Virus record (IMG/VR): IMGVR_UViG_3300032334_002567
Location: 124,001 to 188,000 of that record
DNA: 64,000 nucleotides
Reading direction: 5' to 3' (one strand)
The notes beneath the pieces were generated by a model that saw only the letters and a program-made list of their open reading frames with translations, had not been told where the DNA came from and searched no databases. This document shows, in pieces, positions 7,483 through 61,984 of this stretch. How positions within the stretch are numbered: the stretch's first letter is position 1; the number at the start of each line of letters is the position of its first letter. The translations under genes and the position numbers were made by a program.

Positions 7483-7566
7483 CCATTTACTTCTCAATAT
7501 ACCCCTTTATTTTCATATATAATATAGGTGCAATGAATGCACTGCTTTTTAAAAAGGAGTTTAATT

Positions 7567-8316: not shown

Positions 8317-8388
8317 TGCGAGGTAGCATAACGGTAATGCAGCAAACTGTTAATTTGTAAAATGTCAGTTCGACTCTGACCTTCGCAG
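8317..8388 (+). tRNA. tRNA-Asn(GTT)
   Basis: Acceptor TGCGAGG/CTTCGCA; anticodon arm GCAAA-CTGTTAA-TTTGT; T arm GTCAG-TTCGACT-CTGAC; no encoded CCA. Confidence 0.92.
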
Positions 8389-9794: not shown

Positions 9795-9865
9795 GCGGAA
9801 ATAGTTTAATGGTAGAACTACCGTCTCCAAAGCGGTTGGTGAGGGTTCGATTCCTTCTTTCCGTG
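9795..9865 (+). tRNA. tRNA-Trp(CCA)
   Basis: Acceptor GCGGAAA/TTTCCGT; anticodon arm ACCGT-CTCCAAA-GCGGT; T arm GAGGG-TTCGATT-CCTTC. Confidence 0.92.
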
Positions 9866-9997
9866 CTTTTGGTGATTTTCCTGAGCGGTCAAAAATCACT
9901 CACTACTTTTAAAACACAGGTTAAAAGGAGAAAAAGAAAAAACAAAAAAGTTTTAATCTCTATATAATATAGGTTCTTTTACATGGAGGTTTAGATC

Positions 9998-37117: not shown

Positions 37118-37402
37118 ATGGAAACCCAGCTTGATAAAAACATGAATATTATTTACATTTTATTTGCTTCAAATTTAGTTTTAATTATAATTAATCTAGT
37201 TCTTACTTTTTACATGGGCGCATTTTTAGTTAGATTCCGAAGGGATTTAACTGAATTAATCTCTAGTTTATTAGAAATCAACATAGAACCTCCAGATCAG
37301 AAACAACCAGTTGAAGAATACCCTAAAACTTGGGATCAGAAGTACGAAGAAGAAATACAAGAAGCGTCTCGTCGGTTGGCACAGCAACAAGGCGATTTTT
37401 AA
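37118..37402 (+). CDS. membrane protein
   Basis: Long hydrophobic helix; TATAAT 5 nt upstream of ATG. Confidence 0.55.
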   Translation: METQLDKNMNIIYILFASNLVLIIINLVLTFYMGAFLVRFRRDLTELISSLLEINIEPPDQKQPVEEYPKTWDQKYEEEIQEASRRLAQQQGDF

Positions 37403-38346
37403 TGAATGAAAAAGTTAATGTAGCTTACAAAAAATTTGATATTGAAAGAAATTTTGGCGTAGAGTTAGAAATGGGTAGTTTTATTCCCAAGAATAAAATA
37501 AAAAATTTGATTAAGGTAGCTTCAAAAGTTCCCGTTGAGGTTACAAAATATCAATTAAGCTCAAACAATAATTTTTGGCATGTCAAAGATGATGCTACTT
37601 GCGGCATTCTAGGTAGGAGAGGTCCCAAGGGAGTAGAGGTTGCATCTTATGTTGCCCAAGGTAGCAAGGACATCAATCACATAGCAGGTATAGCTAGTTT
37701 TTTATACGATGCTGGATGTAGGTCAAATCAAAATTGTGGCACACACATTCATGCTGATGTTAAAGATCTAGATATAAAAGCCATTGGCACAATATTATCT
37801 TATTGGCTTAAGATTGAGACTTGGATAGAAAATTCACTACCCAGCTCCAGAATAAATAATAAATACTGTAGAAGATTGTCAGGCACTATAGGCCTTGATC
37901 GTGATAAAAAAAGAAAACCAGAAGATGTTTTTTCTTTTCTTGCACCATCCAATTTGAATGTTTATGAGAACGAAGAGAGAAGGGTCTCTTTGAATTTAGT
38001 AAATTATATGCGTTCTATAGTCGGCATTGCAAAAAGAAAAACTATAGAACTTAGATATCCTGAAGGCACACTAGATTCAAGGGACATAAAATCATGGATC
38101 TATTTATTTTTAACTTTTATAGAAAACTGTAAAGATAAAGATATTCCTGACAATTTATTGGATTGTGAGTCAATTGATGAGGTTCTTTGTTTTTTAGGCT
38201 TAGGCCATACCCCAGAAACTTTTTTTATTTTTTCAAGTGATTTACATGATACAAGAATTTGGTTCTTACAGAGATTAATCAGATATGGAGGTAAAAAACA
38301 CAAGGAACAAGCAGAAAAAAAGCTTGAATTTTTAACAAAAAATTAG
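37402..38346 (+). CDS. putative amidoligase (amidoligase_2 / COOH-NH2 ligase-like)
   Basis: FGVELE, W..KDDAT, EVAS, CGTHIH, TIELR..EGT. Confidence 0.8.
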   Translation: MNEKVNVAYKKFDIERNFGVELEMGSFIPKNKIKNLIKVASKVPVEVTKYQLSSNNNFWHVKDDATCGILGRRGPKGVEVASYVAQGSKDINHIAGIASFLYDAGCRSNQNCGTHIHADVKDLDIKAIGTILSYWLKIETWIENSLPSSRINNKYCRRLSGTIGLDRDKKRKPEDVFSFLAPSNLNVYENEERRVSLNLVNYMRSIVGIAKRKTIELRYPEGTLDSRDIKSWIYLFLTFIENCKDKDIPDNLLDCESIDEVLCFLGLGHTPETFFIFSSDLHDTRIWFLQRLIRYGGKKHKEQAEKKLEFLTKN

Positions 38347-38411
38347 AGTTTAAAACGATAAATACATTAACTAAATTTTAACTATTTAACTAACTATAAG
38401 GAATTTTAACT

Positions 38412-38702
38412 ATGACTGAAGAACTTAAAAAACAACTAATTTTATCTAATCTAGAATTTGCAAATAGAGTAGCATTGAGTAAAAAGAGATTTTTATCGCA
38501 TATACATTATGAGGATCTTCAATCCGCTGCTTATTTTGGATTAGTGCAAGCAGCAAATAAATATGACTTTAAAAAAAATGACTGTTTTCAGGCGTTCGCA
38601 TTCTGTAGAATAAAGGGTGCAGTGCAAGATTACTTACGAGAAATCAATTGGGGCTCTAGAAGAAATCCTATACACATGGAAAGCTTGCAAAACTTAATTT
38701 GA
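38412..38702 (+). CDS. short sigma factor containing only region 2 (FliA/WhiG-like)
   Basis: EDLQSAAYFGLVQAANKYD...F..FA..RIKGAVQDYLRE..W; stops at 96 aa with no region 4. Confidence 0.8.
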   Translation: MTEELKKQLILSNLEFANRVALSKKRFLSHIHYEDLQSAAYFGLVQAANKYDFKKNDCFQAFAFCRIKGAVQDYLREINWGSRRNPIHMESLQNLI

Positions 38703-38709
38703 GGATATT

Positions 38710-39624
38710 ATGTTCAAAATTACATTTTTAATATTTTGTTTTATTGTCAGTTCTTCTTTTTTATTTGCTGACGATTTGATATTTCCAGCAGATGTTCCTG
38801 TAACGACTGCGGAAACTTCTGATCCTGAATTACGTTCTTTAGAGTGGAATAGATACGTCAATAAAAACTTTGTAATTTTGAGCATAGATGACTCTCAAGG
38901 CCTCTGGCTTTGTAAAAATGTACCAAATTTGAATGAATGGTGCGTTTCAAGATGGGGATTCACACCAAAAAAATTATCAAAAGAATGCAGGATATTTTGT
39001 GTCCCAAACAATTCTCTTCTTAAAAAGTTATTTGGTTTAGATTCGCCAAAGGTAGAAATAAGAAAAGACAAAGATGGCAAGACGGAGATAATGGCCATGT
39101 GGTTTGTTTTAGATGAAACACGAACCACTCCTTTTTTGCCGCAGTCTCTTACGAGGGTGGGTTTTTCTGATTTTTCAGAGCAGAGTAGCTATGTCATACC
39201 TTTCTGGTTTTTAAGATCAGCGGAACTTATAAATTCTTCCTCTAAAAGCAGTTTTAAAAATGCAGCAGAAGTTTTTGAAAAGAATGAATATAAAAATGTT
39301 TCGCTTCTTAGTTGCAAAGAATTACTTAGCACCGATATTAAAGGGTATCAAGCTATGCCGAGCAGCAAGAAAGATTGTTTTGATTCACAATCTATTGTTC
39401 TTTGCATGATGCTGAGAAAAGAATTTGGTGAATCTAAACTTCACTATTTTTTAAGTCTTTTGCAAAGTAAAGATCTCTCTTTAGCTCTAAAGGATTCTTA
39501 TGGCTATGAAAATTTAGAAGATTTTGAAAAAAAGTACTTAATGTATTATAGAGATTTTTCAAAAGACTTATTTCAAGATAAAGTTCCCAATTCATATTTC
39601 GAAGTTAAAAGTGTCAAGAATTAA
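38710..39624 (+). CDS. secreted hypothetical protein
   Basis: Signal-peptide-like N-terminus ending LFA-DD. Confidence 0.55.
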   Translation: MFKITFLIFCFIVSSSFLFADDLIFPADVPVTTAETSDPELRSLEWNRYVNKNFVILSIDDSQGLWLCKNVPNLNEWCVSRWGFTPKKLSKECRIFCVPNNSLLKKLFGLDSPKVEIRKDKDGKTEIMAMWFVLDETRTTPFLPQSLTRVGFSDFSEQSSYVIPFWFLRSAELINSSSKSSFKNAAEVFEKNEYKNVSLLSCKELLSTDIKGYQAMPSSKKDCFDSQSIVLCMMLRKEFGESKLHYFLSLLQSKDLSLALKDSYGYENLEDFEKKYLMYYRDFSKDLFQDKVPNSYFEVKSVKN

Positions 39625-45483: not shown

Positions 45484-45747
45484 GTGATAAACAACGATTT
45501 GACAAAAAAGGCGATTAAAGAAAACATCCCTATAGCTGAATTAGAGTATCTTGGTCTTCCTTTAAGGGTAATTAATGCCTTGGAAGATTCTAAGCACAAC
45601 TTAATTTATATAAAGGACTTAGTTTCTTTAAATGAGAAACAGATTTCTTCAATAGAGAACTTGGGTTCTTCTGGGGTGAAACAAATTGTTGCTGCTTTAG
45701 AAAAGTTAGGTGATTTGGATAAAGAAATAGCAAGATGGCACAGATAA
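45484..45747 (+). CDS. stand-alone RNA polymerase alpha-CTD-like protein
   Basis: IPIAEL..GLPLRVINALE...IYIKDLV...IENLGSSGVKQI..AL. Confidence 0.8.
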   Translation: MINNDLTKKAIKENIPIAELEYLGLPLRVINALEDSKHNLIYIKDLVSLNEKQISSIENLGSSGVKQIVAALEKLGDLDKEIARWHR

Positions 45748-53462: not shown

Positions 53463-53502
53463 TTAGTATCGTTAATATATAATTAAAGTTTGGGAGGAAT
53501 AT

Positions 53503-60451: not shown

Positions 60452-61984
60452 ATGAAAAAGGCAAATTCTTTCGGTTTAATTGACGGTATTGAACATCTCC
60501 ACGGTTCCCTCTTCAAAGTTAAATTTTCAAAAATTATAACCACCGACAAAGTGGAAGAATCTTCGGATTATGTATTTTCTAACCCAAGACTTTTAACGCA
60601 GAACGGCACCGAAACCCTTACAGATAGGTCTTTGTCTGCGGACCTAAGGGAAAACATTAAGCACAGAACGCTTTTGAATCCCTTGATTTGCCGTTGGGTT
60701 GGCGATAGTGAAAATGCACACCCCCAGCTTGTTGGTGGTGATCGTAGGTATAGAGCCTTGGACTATCTCATCTCTAAAAAAGAGATGGTAATTGATCCAA
60801 GAGAAAGCAAATTTGGAGAAACTACTTCTGAAAGAGAAATGGTTTCTGCTGACATTGCATACGAATACGTTGTCTGCCAGATATTTAGCTGTGCAAGCGA
60901 TCTTGAAGCTGCAACGCTCGCATGGGCAGAAAATAAGAATCGCATCAACCTGACGGACGGTCATGAAGTGGCTGCTGTGCGGGAATTCCGTTTGTATGGA
61001 GCCAGTGACGATCAGATTCTTGAAATCCTGCAAAGAGATTCAAAATGGCTTCATGAAACAGATGAACTTCTTGAAAAAATTGACGAAGATACGTTGTCTC
61101 AGCTTTGTGAAGACAAAATCAAGAGAAGCGTAGCCTCCCAACTTTTAAAGATTGACGATCTTGAAAAGAGATCGGAAGTTTTAAGTGCTGCTATTGTCAA
61201 TGCACAGGAAAGCCATAAGGCTAAAACCTCAAAGTTGGACAAACAGCTAGACGCAATTAAAAATAAAAGAGGTAGGGCTGAGACAAAAAAAGTTATTGCA
61301 GAAAGTAATAACGATGAAACCTTGCTTCGACAGTCAAAGAAGGTCATTGACAGGACTGAAGAACGAGAAAAAGAGATTCAGAATAAGAAATCGAAGACAA
61401 AGCCAATCGCTTCTTCCAAAAATTTGAAGCAAGCTATGGCCGAAGTTGGTGTTGAAGAAAATTCAAACGCCAGAGCCGGTATCAAGAGTATTAAGAAAGT
61501 TTTGGCCACTATCCAGTCAATTATCGATAAGGATGGTGTTGTTGATATTCTTGGTGAAGACGTCTCTTTTCAGCTTGATCCAGTTTACTTGGAATTATTG
61601 AAGCTTGTTTTAGAAAACCATGCGCTCAAAGATTCTGATAGTCTAAAGGATACTCTGGATCAGTGGCGGGAAGAATTTCCAGAAGCTGTTGATGCCCATA
61701 GTGCTGTTGTAGAGCAAGAAATTGTAATTGTAGATGAGGATGAGGATGAGGATGAGGATGAGGATGAGGATGAGGATGAGGATGAGGATGAGGATGAGGA
61801 TGAGGATGAGGATGAGGATGAGGATGAGGATGTAGAAGACGAAGACGAAGACGAAGACGAAGACGAAGACGAAGACGAAGACGAAGACGAAGAACTGATC
61901 AGCAGCGAATCAGACGATGAATTTTATGATGATTCTTCTGAAGAGCTTGAAAGCCTTGTACAAGATGAAGAAGACGAGGACTAA
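60452..61984 (+). CDS. ParB/Srx N-terminal-domain protein with coiled coil and long Asp/Glu tail
   Basis: NPR, LLNPL, LVGGDRRYRA, AEN..R..L. Confidence 0.7.
   Translation: MKKANSFGLIDGIEHLHGSLFKVKFSKIITTDKVEESSDYVFSNPRLLTQNGTETLTDRSLSADLRENIKHRTLLNPLICRWVGDSENAHPQLVGGDRRYRALDYLISKKEMVIDPRESKFGETTSEREMVSADIAYEYVVCQIFSCASDLEAATLAWAENKNRINLTDGHEVAAVREFRLYGASDDQILEILQRDSKWLHETDELLEKIDEDTLSQLCEDKIKRSVASQLLKIDDLEKRSEVLSAAIVNAQESHKAKTSKLDKQLDAIKNKRGRAETKKVIAESNNDETLLRQSKKVIDRTEEREKEIQNKKSKTKPIASSKNLKQAMAEVGVEENSNARAGIKSIKKVLATIQSIIDKDGVVDILGEDVSFQLDPVYLELLKLVLENHALKDSDSLKDTLDQWREEFPEAVDAHSAVVEQEIVIVDEDEDEDEDEDEDEDEDEDEDEDEDEDEDEDEDVEDEDEDEDEDEDEDEDEDEELISSESDDEFYDDSSEELESLVQDEEDED
61733..61891 (+). 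repeat. perfect hexamer repeats (GATGAG)16.5 then (GACGAA)9 encoding poly-DE
   Basis: Directly visible in the sequence. Confidence 0.95.

What the first reader, a model, noticed from the sequence alone, without database searches (positions are those of the whole stretch)
38358..38702. Sigma factor reduced to region 2, with TTAACTA repeats upstream
Seen: a 96-aa FliA/WhiG-like region 2 with a clean stop, immediately followed by an unrelated gene, so no region 4 follows. Upstream are an ATAAATA box and TTAACTA repeated at 38367, 38378, 38386 and 38406. Known: region 2 binds core RNAP and the -10 element, and T4 gp55 is a sigma lacking region 4 that reads a lone -10. Inference: either a minimal sigma for -10-only promoters such as the TA(A/T)ATA box, or a decoy that sequesters core RNAP or anti-sigma factors.
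Basis: partly seen in the sequence, partly recalled or inferred. Interest (0 to 1): 0.6.

Follow-up and report, generated by a model that had tools for sequence, protein, structure and literature searches.

The report
Phage sigma factor reduced to domain 2
A huge uncultured phage carries a conserved 96-residue protein that is only the RNA-polymerase-binding, -10-reading domain of a sigma factor; relatives have lost the other DNA-binding domain more than once, so it probably redirects host RNA polymerase in a minimal way.

Summary
ORF 38412-38702 (96 aa) is a complete FliA/WhiG-like sigma domain 2 with a real stop codon. An unrelated secreted protein gene starts 7 nt later.

The window lies in a 381-kb huge-phage record with no RNA polymerase gene found.

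It is not a recent pseudogene:
- At least nine other proteins of 90-120 aa, in the same gene neighbourhood where the contig shows it, also have domain 2 only.
- dN/dS among five short genes with DNA in hand is 0.07-0.35.
- The DNA-reading helix is as conserved in short forms as in long ones.
- Other relatives carry a compact 159-181-aa sigma2+sigma4 protein at the same position.
- A topology test rejects a single origin of the short forms (p 0.019), so sigma4 was probably lost repeatedly.

No relocated region 4 and no gp55 homologue were found.

The TTAACTA cluster is unique in the genome and specific to this gene. Repeats of lineage-specific sequence sit in the leader of both short and long orthologues. 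They are therefore not a promoter class read by this protein, and more likely a leader or translation element.

Best reading: a stand-alone sigma2 that binds host core polymerase and works on promoters without a -35 element. A pure competitor is the main rival. The function is untested.

The parts
38412..38702 (+). CDS of the 96-aa stand-alone sigma domain 2 (FliA/WhiG-like regions 1.2-like to 2.4, plus a WGSRR segment that aligns with the start of region 3.0 and about 10 residues of linker). TGA stop at 38700-38702.
   Evidence: Pfam Sigma70_r2 35 bits. NCBIfam FliA_WhiG is the best model. AF2 model pLDDT 85 with four helices. Foldseek TMq 0.71-0.75 to sigma28/WhiG. Nine other short family members of 90-120 aa. 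dN/dS 0.07-0.35.
38358..38364 (+). ATAAATA box, a likely -10-type promoter element. TAAATA occupies 38359-38364. No recognisable -35 lies 16-18 bp upstream in the window.
   Evidence: Read from the sequence. A TAAATA/TATAAT-type box stands at the equivalent place in most of the 17 orthologous loci. In five relatives it has a TTGAA(A/T) -35 at 16-17 bp. The sigma70 consensus scan finds no promoter in 38347-38411. TATATAA-type boxes are enriched near gene starts, 22 against 3.6 expected.
38367..38412 (+). Array of four TTAACTA copies (38367, 38378, 38386, 38406) in the presumed 5' leader. The 12-nt AATTTTAACTAT at 38374-38385 is repeated exactly at 38402-38413, so the spacer between Shine-Dalgarno and AUG is itself a repeat copy.
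   Evidence: It is the only such cluster in the 381-kb record and never appears in simulations. TTAACTA copies are conserved before the orthologues in L011, L012, L015, L016 (6 copies), L018 and L028. This is the only gene of 519 with three or more copies of its pre-start heptamer. The leader RNA is unstructured.
38398..38402 (+). Shine-Dalgarno AAGGA, 9 nt before the ATG.
   Evidence: Read from the sequence. AAGGA/AGGAG stands at the same place in the orthologues.
38710..39624 (+). Conserved downstream neighbour, not part of the sigma. It is a 304-aa secreted protein with a Peptidase_MA_2/DUF1570-like predicted fold and no HExxH motif.
   Evidence: sequence. ESM Atlas feature and structure hits. 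It is orthologous to the 287-aa gene that follows the full-length sigma in L020 (36% identity, E 3e-69). The same gene follows the sigma in L023, L025, L035-L037 and L039-L041.
37402..38346 (+). Conserved upstream neighbour, an Amidoligase_2 gene. The listed ORF starts at TTG 37330; the ATG at 37402 gives a length that matches the relatives. No terminator separates it from the sigma gene.
   Evidence: Pfam PF12224 E 8e-22. Same position in relatives. No terminator-like site found.

Best explanation
The gene encodes a functional, stand-alone sigma domain 2. It descends from a compact phage sigma (domain 2, linker, domain 4; about 160-180 aa) that lost domain 4.

Proposed mechanism:
- The protein is made from its own promoter, through an unusual repeat-bearing and unstructured leader.
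- It binds the host core RNA polymerase at the beta' clamp helices through regions 2.1-2.2. The record holds no RNA polymerase gene.
- It uses its conserved region 2.3-2.4 helix and WGSRR segment to read and melt a -10-type element on phage promoters that need no -35 contact. This is the logic of T4 gp55. An auxiliary factor may help but has not been identified.
- While bound, it necessarily excludes host sigma factors.

What is shown: domain identity, fold, age, selection, repeated loss of domain 4, and the absence of a nearby or recognisable domain-4 partner.

What is inferred: core binding (only weak in-silico support), promoter reading, and the target promoter class.

The TTAACTA repeats belong to this gene's own leader. 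They are most likely a translation or leader control element, not the factor's promoter signal.
For: Domain and fold:
- Sigma70_r2 scores above the cut-off, and FliA/WhiG is the best family and structure match.

Maintained gene:
- Nine other family members are 90-120 aa. All those with DNA in hand end in real stops, in the same neighbourhood where the contig shows it.
- dN/dS is 0.07-0.35 with synonymous sites near saturation.
- Thirty columns are invariant, including the ELQSAAY.GLV.AAN segment (core-binding region) and RI.GA..DYLRE..WG.R (DNA-reading region).
- Within-group identity of region 2.3-2.4 is 0.70 in short forms against 0.65 in long forms. For the WGSRR segment it is 0.57 against 0.37. 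There is no relaxation.

Derived state:
- The same genomic slot holds 159-181-aa sigma2+sigma4 proteins in other relatives, followed by the same downstream gene.
- The ML tree needs 6 changes of state, and the AU test rejects a single short clade (p 0.0186).

Host polymerase dependence:
- No RNAP beta and no T7-type RNAP match in the record.

Promoters without a -35:
- 47 TATATAA/TATAATA/TATAAATA boxes lie within 70 nt of gene starts, with no information content at -35.

Binding test:
- The protein against E. coli beta' residues 240-340 scored 0.41, with a best control of 0.01. The verdict was 'weak support'.
- That mark was reached by 58 of 80 solved complexes and 2 of 110 mismatched pairs, but scores of 0.60 or under by only 7 of those 80.
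- The runs agree in at least 90% of their contacts, and the partner's pLDDT is at least 67.

Precedents:
- Sigmas without their own region 4 are known: T4 gp55/gp33, SPO1 gp33/34, SigO-RsoA and Tn916 Sig7-8.
Against: - There is no expression or biochemical data. No RNA run holds the locus.
- The binding test is weak, uses a non-host beta' fragment, and may reflect memory of solved sigma-core complexes.
- The linker that acts as the sigma finger is missing, which would handicap initiation.
- The -10-only boxes could equally be read by host sigma70 or by the phage's two ~300-aa sigma-like proteins. Nothing links this protein to them.
- Conservation of the 2.3-2.4 helix may partly reflect fold stability rather than DNA reading.
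- The record is only about 79% complete, so a partner could lie in the missing part.
Confidence: 0.4

Rival explanations
1. Competitor or decoy. The sigma2-only protein occupies the beta' clamp-helix site on host core polymerase and blocks host sigma factors (host shut-off or a sigma switch). It does not direct initiation itself.
For: Domain 2 carries the main core-binding surface (established knowledge of sigma70-family factors), and that segment is the most conserved part of the family. Weak in-silico support for binding beta' 240-340. Domain 4 and the linker, both needed for normal initiation, are gone. Repeated loss of domain 4 fits a function that needs only domain 2. In five relatives a host-type TTGAA(A/T)-16/17-TA(T/A)AAT promoter precedes the gene, which fits early expression by the host holoenzyme.
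Against: The DNA-reading helix and the WGSRR segment are at least as conserved in short forms as in long ones. A mere plug would not need this, although fold constraints could explain part of it. A decoy would also compete with the phage's own two sigma-like proteins.
Confidence: 0.25
2. Half of a split (two-subunit) sigma. A separately encoded domain-4-type protein supplies the flap and -35 contacts, as in SigO-RsoA, Tn916 Sig7-Sig8 or T4 gp55+gp33.
For: Such systems exist. Single-domain sigma4 and sigma2 proteins are reported as common in phages. The record encodes small HTH proteins with sub-threshold region-4 similarity. The best is a 94-aa double-HTH protein at C1:28636-28920 (Sigma70_r4 21-22 bits against a cut-off of 24.1).
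Against: No region-4 match lies in the 64-kb window or next to the gene in any relative; known split sigmas are adjacent genes. The 94-aa HTH protein fits HTH_24 better, is widespread in huge phages, and has an orthologue in LR756511.1, which keeps the full-length sigma. It therefore does not track the loss of region 4. Searching with the C-terminal halves of two long orthologues found no relocated copy. No gp55 homologue was found.
Confidence: 0.15
3. The TTAACTA repeats (and the ATAAATA box) are the promoter signals that this minimal sigma reads, so the gene is autoregulated through them.
For: The repeats are real, non-random and conserved before the short orthologues. Alternative sigmas are often autoregulated, for example Tn916 Sig7-8. 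In L016 and L011 the repeat unit contains a TATAAA-like word.
Against: TTAACTA is not enriched anywhere else in 381 kb and is not a leader motif of other genes, so there is no regulon. Leader repeats also precede long orthologues. The repeated word differs by lineage (TTAACTA, GACTTTCA, ACTTTCA, ACTACCG) while the sigma2 reading helix is invariant. Spacing varies from 8 to 20 nt. The best-conserved copy abuts the Shine-Dalgarno sequence, and one copy overlaps the AUG. This resembles the T7 gene 10 leader enhancer TTAACTTTA.
Confidence: 0.05
4. Decaying pseudogene, assembly error, or a longer protein made by stop-codon read-through or another genetic code.
For: Orthologues with region 4 exist.
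Against: Strong purifying selection. An independent, 99% identical 96-aa copy on another contig. Ten short forms with real stops. The downstream gene lies in different frames and at different offsets in relatives: overlap ATGA, +6, +7 and +45 nt. No region-4 remnant follows the stop. All three stop codons are in normal use.
Confidence: 0.02

Closest known systems
FliA/WhiG (sigma28) group-3 sigma factors
   Same: Best sequence, profile and structure match for domain 2. The RI.GA..D..R helix and the W..R segment after region 2.4 align with FliA.
   Different: There is no region 3 and no region 4. The score is far below the family's full-length cut-off (61.9 against 189.6 bits). Even the long orthologues lack region 3. 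The gene is phage-encoded with no flagellar context.
T4 gp55 (late sigma, works with gp33 and the gp45 clamp)
   Same: A phage-encoded specificity factor for host core polymerase that lacks region 4 and acts at promoters made of a single -10-type TATAAATA box (and established knowledge). The window has an ATAAATA box, and the genome has many boxes without a -35.
   Different: No detectable sequence similarity (E 6.4). No gp55 homologue in the record. The protein is about half the size. A gp33 partner was not searched for and a gp45 partner was not examined. This is a functional analogy only.
[quoted passage not shown]
   Same: A small (about 80-100 aa) polypeptide carrying sigma region 2 functions separately from region 4.
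   Different: Those genes sit beside their region-4 partner and need it. Here no partner gene is adjacent or recognisable. This family is FliA-like and derives from a fused sigma2-sigma4 ancestor.
'Domain2Only' sigma-like proteins catalogued in phage and bacterial genomes (Tiwary and Seshasayee, bioRxiv 10.64898/2026.10.08.757525)
   Same: It meets their operational definition: a Pfam sigma2 hit and no other sigma domain. They report such proteins as common in phages, and note that some may derive from multi-domain sigmas by minimisation.
   Different: That survey gives no function, synteny or selection analysis. Here the direction of change (loss), its recurrence and the purifying selection are shown for one orthologous family.
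Group 4 (ECF-type) minimal sigma2-linker-sigma4 factors
   Same: The long orthologues have exactly this architecture (159-181 aa). The window protein scores 42.5 bits on TIGR02937 against a cut-off of 42.9.
   Different: Domain 4 and most of the linker are missing. Domain 2 is closer to FliA/WhiG than to ECF models. No anti-sigma gene follows: the downstream protein has no cytoplasmic N-terminal domain.

Membership tests
Sigma-70 family (by domain content) | A sigma domain 2 (Pfam PF04542) above the gathering score | tested here: met
   35 bits against 24. Sigma2 fold, TMq 0.71-0.75.
Sigma-70 family (by domain content) | A sigma domain 4 (PF04545 or PF08281) in the same polypeptide | tested here: not met
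   No hit in the protein. The protein ends about 10 residues into the linker. No region-4 remnant lies downstream.
FliA/WhiG subfamily (TIGR02479) | Full-length match above the curated cut-off (regions 2, 3 and 4) | tested here: not met
   61.9 bits against a cut-off of 189.6. Only profile positions 18-80 of 224 are matched.
T4 gp55 family | Sequence homology to gp55 | tested here: not met
   BLASTP E 6.4. No match to gp55 in the record. That search had no positive control and the record is about 79% complete.
T4 gp55 family | Works with a gp33-type flap-binding co-activator and the sliding clamp | not tested
   gp33 is short and divergent, and no search was run. Biochemistry would be needed.
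Two-subunit (split) sigma, SigO-RsoA / Sig7-Sig8 type | A small subunit bearing region 2 only | tested here: met
Two-subunit (split) sigma, SigO-RsoA / Sig7-Sig8 type | An adjacent, co-transcribed gene for the region-4 subunit | tested here: not met
   The neighbours are an amidoligase and a secreted MA-peptidase-like protein, in the window and in relatives. No region-4 hit at E <= 0.1 lies inside the window.
Two-subunit (split) sigma, SigO-RsoA / Sig7-Sig8 type | Physical and functional dependence on the partner | not testable with these tools
   No credible partner was identified.
Single-domain 'Domain2Only' sigma-like proteins of phages | A Pfam sigma2 hit at the trusted cut-off with no other sigma domain | tested here: met
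.
RNA polymerase core-binding sigma (functional class) | Binds the beta' clamp helices | tested here: inconclusive
   Score 0.41 against a best control of 0.01, verdict 'weak support'. E. coli beta' 240-340 was used instead of the unknown host's.

The most novel reading that the evidence does not exclude
The 96-aa protein is a self-sufficient promoter-specificity subunit, which would make it the smallest sigma known. With host core polymerase alone it would read and melt -10-only TATA(A/T)A(A/T)-type phage promoters. Domain 4 would have been discarded repeatedly in this huge-phage family because these promoters need no -35 or flap contact. A bolder variant is that it stays on the elongating enzyme and acts at the repeat-bearing leader.
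Probability: 0.15. Interest if true: 0.8.

Novelty: new variant of a known kind. Interest (0 to 1): 0.5.

Why it matters
Sigma factors are taught as needing at least domains 2 and 4. The natural exceptions (T4 gp55/gp33, SigO-RsoA, Tn916 Sig7-8) all pair the domain-2 part with a partner.

Here an orthologous family shows the transition directly. The same genomic slot holds sigma2+sigma4 in some huge phages and sigma2 alone in others. The short state arose more than once and is kept by selection.

This gives a clean natural experiment on what domain 2 can do alone: initiate, melt, or simply displace host sigma. It also gives a ready pair of constructs to compare on the bench, the 96-aa and roughly 165-aa orthologues. 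It adds a concrete, testable case to the recent survey claim that single-domain sigma proteins are common in phages.

If the protein turns out to be only a competitor, it would be a new type of phage host-takeover factor built from a sigma fragment.

Tried and rejected
- **Recent pseudogene:** rejected on selection, recurrence and real stop codons.
- **Other genetic code or read-through:** rejected. All three stops are in use, the downstream frames differ among relatives, and no region-4 remnant follows the stop.
- **Region 4 moved elsewhere in the genome:** tblastn with the C-terminal halves of P0009 and the LR756511.1 orthologue found only the region 4 of the phage's own ~300-aa sigma-like genes and a 94-aa double-HTH protein. 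That protein is a generic HTH_24 protein, is widespread in huge phages, and is present in a genome that keeps the full sigma. The other region-4-like hits are generic HTH proteins. PF08281 found nothing.
- **T4 gp55 homologue:** none found, though the search had no positive control.
- **TTAACTA as a genome-wide promoter or leader motif:** rejected.
- **Sigma70-type promoter or terminator in the intergenic region:** none found by the consensus scan.
- **Structured leader RNA:** rejected (MFE -1.3 kcal/mol, z 0.63).
- **Expression data:** no RNA run holds the locus.
- **First viral-contig scan with the single protein:** found nothing. The scan with the alignment found 7 long-form loci.
- **Megablast of 15 kb against phage records:** no match.
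- **Test of whether each lineage's repeat equals its own pre-start heptamer:** clear in the window and in L016, L035 and L037, but not general.
- **Complex prediction with beta':** returned only 'weak support'. It is cited as such and not used as proof.
- Lengths above 282 aa or below 53 aa were therefore not sampled by the two word-index searches.

Full report
**What is there**

The ORF at 38412-38702 (+) encodes 96 residues, from an ATG preceded by AAGGA (38398-38402) to a TGA stop.
- Pfam finds only Sigma70_r2: E 1.2e-8, 35 bits against a cut-off of 24, covering profile positions 14-70 of 71.
- PHROGs files it under phage sigma factors.
- The best NCBIfam model is FliA_WhiG. The best solved-structure sequences are FliA and WhiG.
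- An AlphaFold2 model built on nine family members is confident (pLDDT 85). It has the four helices of sigma domain 2 and superposes on sigma28, WhiG and sigmaA domain 2 with query TM-scores of 0.63-0.75.
- The next gene begins 7 nt after the stop. It encodes a signal-peptide protein with a Peptidase_MA_2/DUF1570-like predicted fold and no HExxH motif.

So are the coordinates of the ATAAATA box (38358-38364) and of the four TTAACTA copies.

**The genome**

The window is positions 124001-188000 of a 381,443-bp linear virus record, estimated to be 79% complete. G+C is about 35%.
- No RNA polymerase beta or single-subunit polymerase match was found, so the phage presumably uses the host enzyme.
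- The record encodes two further sigma-like proteins of about 300 aa with regions 2 and 4.
- It also encodes a stand-alone alpha-CTD-like protein at window 45484-45747.
- TAA, TGA and TAG all serve as stops, so no other genetic code is indicated.

The word-index search with the 96-aa protein found a 99% identical 96-aa copy on another contig and seven proteins of 90-96 aa at 51-70% identity. All carry region 2 only. It also found one 161-aa protein with regions 2 and 4.

A second search, with the 161-aa protein, and an alignment-based scan of IMG/VR added many 159-181-aa two-domain forms and two more short ones of 94 and 120 aa.

Every short form for which DNA was fetched ends in a real stop codon.

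The neighbourhood is the same for both forms. The order is: a large structural-type protein, a small membrane protein, the amidoligase (usually present), the sigma gene, the secreted ~290-340-aa protein, a Transgly_assoc protein, then thioredoxin and DNA ligase.

The gene after the window's sigma is orthologous to the gene after a full-length sigma (36% identity, E 3e-69). Domain 4 was therefore removed cleanly, not split off by an insertion.

**Selection and history**
- Among the five short-form genes with DNA in hand (window, L011, L015, L016, L018), dN/dS is 0.07-0.35, with synonymous sites at or near saturation.
- Thirty alignment columns are invariant. They include the region 2.1-2.2 core-binding stretch, the region 2.3-2.4 helix, and a W-G-x-R segment that aligns with the start of region 3.0 in FliA.
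- Within-group identity is not lower in the short forms in any region. For 2.3-2.4 it is 0.70 against 0.65, and for WGSRR it is 0.57 against 0.37.
- On a maximum-likelihood tree of domain 2, the window protein and four others form one short clade. Other short forms group with different long forms.
- Forcing all ten short forms into one clade costs 27.9 log-likelihood units and is rejected (AU p 0.0186).

With only 88 columns this is suggestive rather than final. It points to repeated loss of domain 4 in an ancestrally two-domain family. In the long forms, domain 4 is also the less conserved half (0.39 against 0.60).

**Search for a missing half**
- No region-4 match lies in the window.
- The C-terminal halves of two long orthologues find no relocated copy in the record.
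- The best candidate is a 94-aa double-HTH protein at C1:28636-28920. It scores below the region-4 cut-off and fits HTH_24 better. It is widespread in huge phages. It has an orthologue in LR756511.1, which keeps its 165-aa sigma. It therefore does not track the loss.
- T4 gp55 shows no similarity to the protein and has no match in the record.
- gp33 was not searched for.

**Core binding**

One complex prediction was run, using E. coli beta' residues 240-340 and the protein with its alignment. The score was 0.41 against a best control of 0.01, and the verdict was 'weak support'.
- By the tool's calibration, the mark was reached by 58 of 80 solved complexes and 2 of 110 mismatches.
- Scores of 0.60 or under were seen in only 7 of those 80.
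- The runs agreed in at least 90% of contacts, and the partner pLDDT was at least 67.

A sigma2-clamp-helix interface is well represented among solved structures. The result therefore shows likeness more than proof.

**The upstream region**

TTAACTA is not over-represented in the window or the genome. Four copies within 46 nt is unique in 381 kb and was never approached in simulations. The motif is not a general leader or promoter word in this phage.

Conservation in the orthologues:
- TTAACTA is conserved before the short orthologues of the window's clade and two others, in 1 to 6 copies. L016 carries a 12-nt tandem array.
- The leaders of long-form genes carry direct repeats too, but of other words: GACTTTCA, ACTTTCA, TTAACTTT, and ACTACCG in a G+C-rich relative.
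- Repetition is significant against shuffles in 9 of 17 loci, including two long forms.

The sigma2 reading helix is invariant across these lineages, and the short forms have no domain 4. Neither domain is therefore a likely reader of the repeats.

Features of the window's own leader:
- A 12-nt word is repeated exactly at 38374-38385 and 38402-38413, so the spacer between Shine-Dalgarno and AUG is itself a repeat copy.
- This is the only one of 519 genes with three or more copies of its pre-start heptamer.
- The leader RNA is unstructured.
- The copy abutting the Shine-Dalgarno sequence is the best conserved. It resembles the T7 gene 10 leader, whose TTAACTTTA is used as a translational enhancer.

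My best guess is a leader or translation control element. This is inference only.

The ATAAATA box corresponds to a TAAATA/TATAAT-type box in most of the 17 orthologous loci.
- In five relatives it has a TTGAA(A/T) hexamer 16-17 bp upstream, making it a host-type promoter.
- In the window no -35 is recognisable.
- Genome-wide, 47 such boxes lie within 70 nt of gene starts, with no conserved -35.

**Mechanism**

The evidence establishes a selected, stand-alone sigma2 protein derived by loss of domain 4. From established knowledge of sigma70-family factors, domain 2 holds the main core-binding surface and the determinants for reading and melting the -10 element. Both segments are conserved here.
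- I favour (0.4) a gp55-like role: the protein binds host core and acts at promoters without a -35, possibly with an unidentified helper.
- The main rival (0.25) is a pure competitor that blocks host sigma.
- A split sigma with an unlinked partner is less likely (0.15).
- A pseudogene or read-through artefact is very unlikely (0.02).

**Relation to what is known**
- Sigmas without their own region 4 are known in T4, SPO1, B. subtilis and Tn916.
- Comparative work on jumbo phages noted 'minimal' single-HTH sigmas and gp33 orthologues in phages that lack a polymerase.
- A 2026 preprint reports that sigma2-only and sigma4-only proteins are common in phages, and that some may arise by minimisation.

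This case fits that catalogue. What is new is the demonstration, within one orthologous huge-phage family, of the two-domain and one-domain states in the same genomic slot. Purifying selection acts on the short state, and the loss was probably recurrent. I rate it a new variant of a known kind, of moderate interest.

**Limits**
- There is no expression or biochemical evidence, and the host is unknown.
- The record is incomplete.
- The tree rests on 88 columns.
- The two word-index searches see only 53-282 aa.

Noticed in passing
G000:C1:272017-322631 (same record, outside the window, + strand): About 70 copies of a motif centred on ATTGTACCCTA lie upstream of short genes. The motif is usually preceded by AAATA and followed by TGT about 5 nt later. 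It is 9-10 times enriched in intergenic DNA. It looks like a phage-specific promoter class, and what reads it is unknown.
   Followed up: partly
window 45484-45747 (+): An 87-aa stand-alone protein matches the C-terminal domain of the RNA polymerase alpha subunit (PF03118, 35 bits). It is also present in relatives L016 and L017. It may be a mimic or competitor for UP-element or activator contacts.
   Followed up: partly
G000:C1:197511-198386 (+), C1:330469-330954 (-), C1:211843-212856 (+); outside the window: There are two ~300-aa sigma-like genes with regions 2 and 4. A third, divergent 338-aa sigma-like ORF is preceded by the TTGTACCCTA motif. LR756511.1 also has three region-2 hits.
   Followed up: partly
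G000:C1:28636-28920 (L007:1471-1755); outside the window: A 94-aa protein with two HTH motifs (HTH_24; region-4 similarity below threshold) is conserved in many huge-phage contigs of up to 673 kb.
   Followed up: yes
window 38710-39624 (+): This secreted 304-aa protein has a Peptidase_MA_2/DUF1570-like predicted fold but no HExxH motif. It always follows the sigma gene and is often translationally coupled to it, with start and stop overlapping as ATGA in L011.
   Followed up: partly
whole record, e.g. window 7510-7530, 9955-9975, 53470-53490: 47 TATATAA/TATAATA/TATAAATA boxes lie within 70 nt of gene starts, with no conserved -35. TATATAA is found 22 times against 3.6 expected within 40 nt of starts.
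   Followed up: partly
window 8317-8388 and 9795-9866 (+): tRNA-Asn (GTT) and tRNA-Trp (CCA) genes.
   Followed up: no
window 61733-61840; also G000:C1:28991-29375, 329662-329731, 379604-379676: Short tandem repeats. These are the only other places in the record where a 7-mer recurs four or more times within 50 nt. The one at C1:28991-29375 gives open frames rich in Gly-Val on the - strand.
   Followed up: no
L016:5920-6000: In one relative the leader repeat has expanded to six copies, five of them in a regular 12-nt tandem array (unit TTAACTATAAAT). The copy number of this element is therefore evolutionarily labile.
   Followed up: partly
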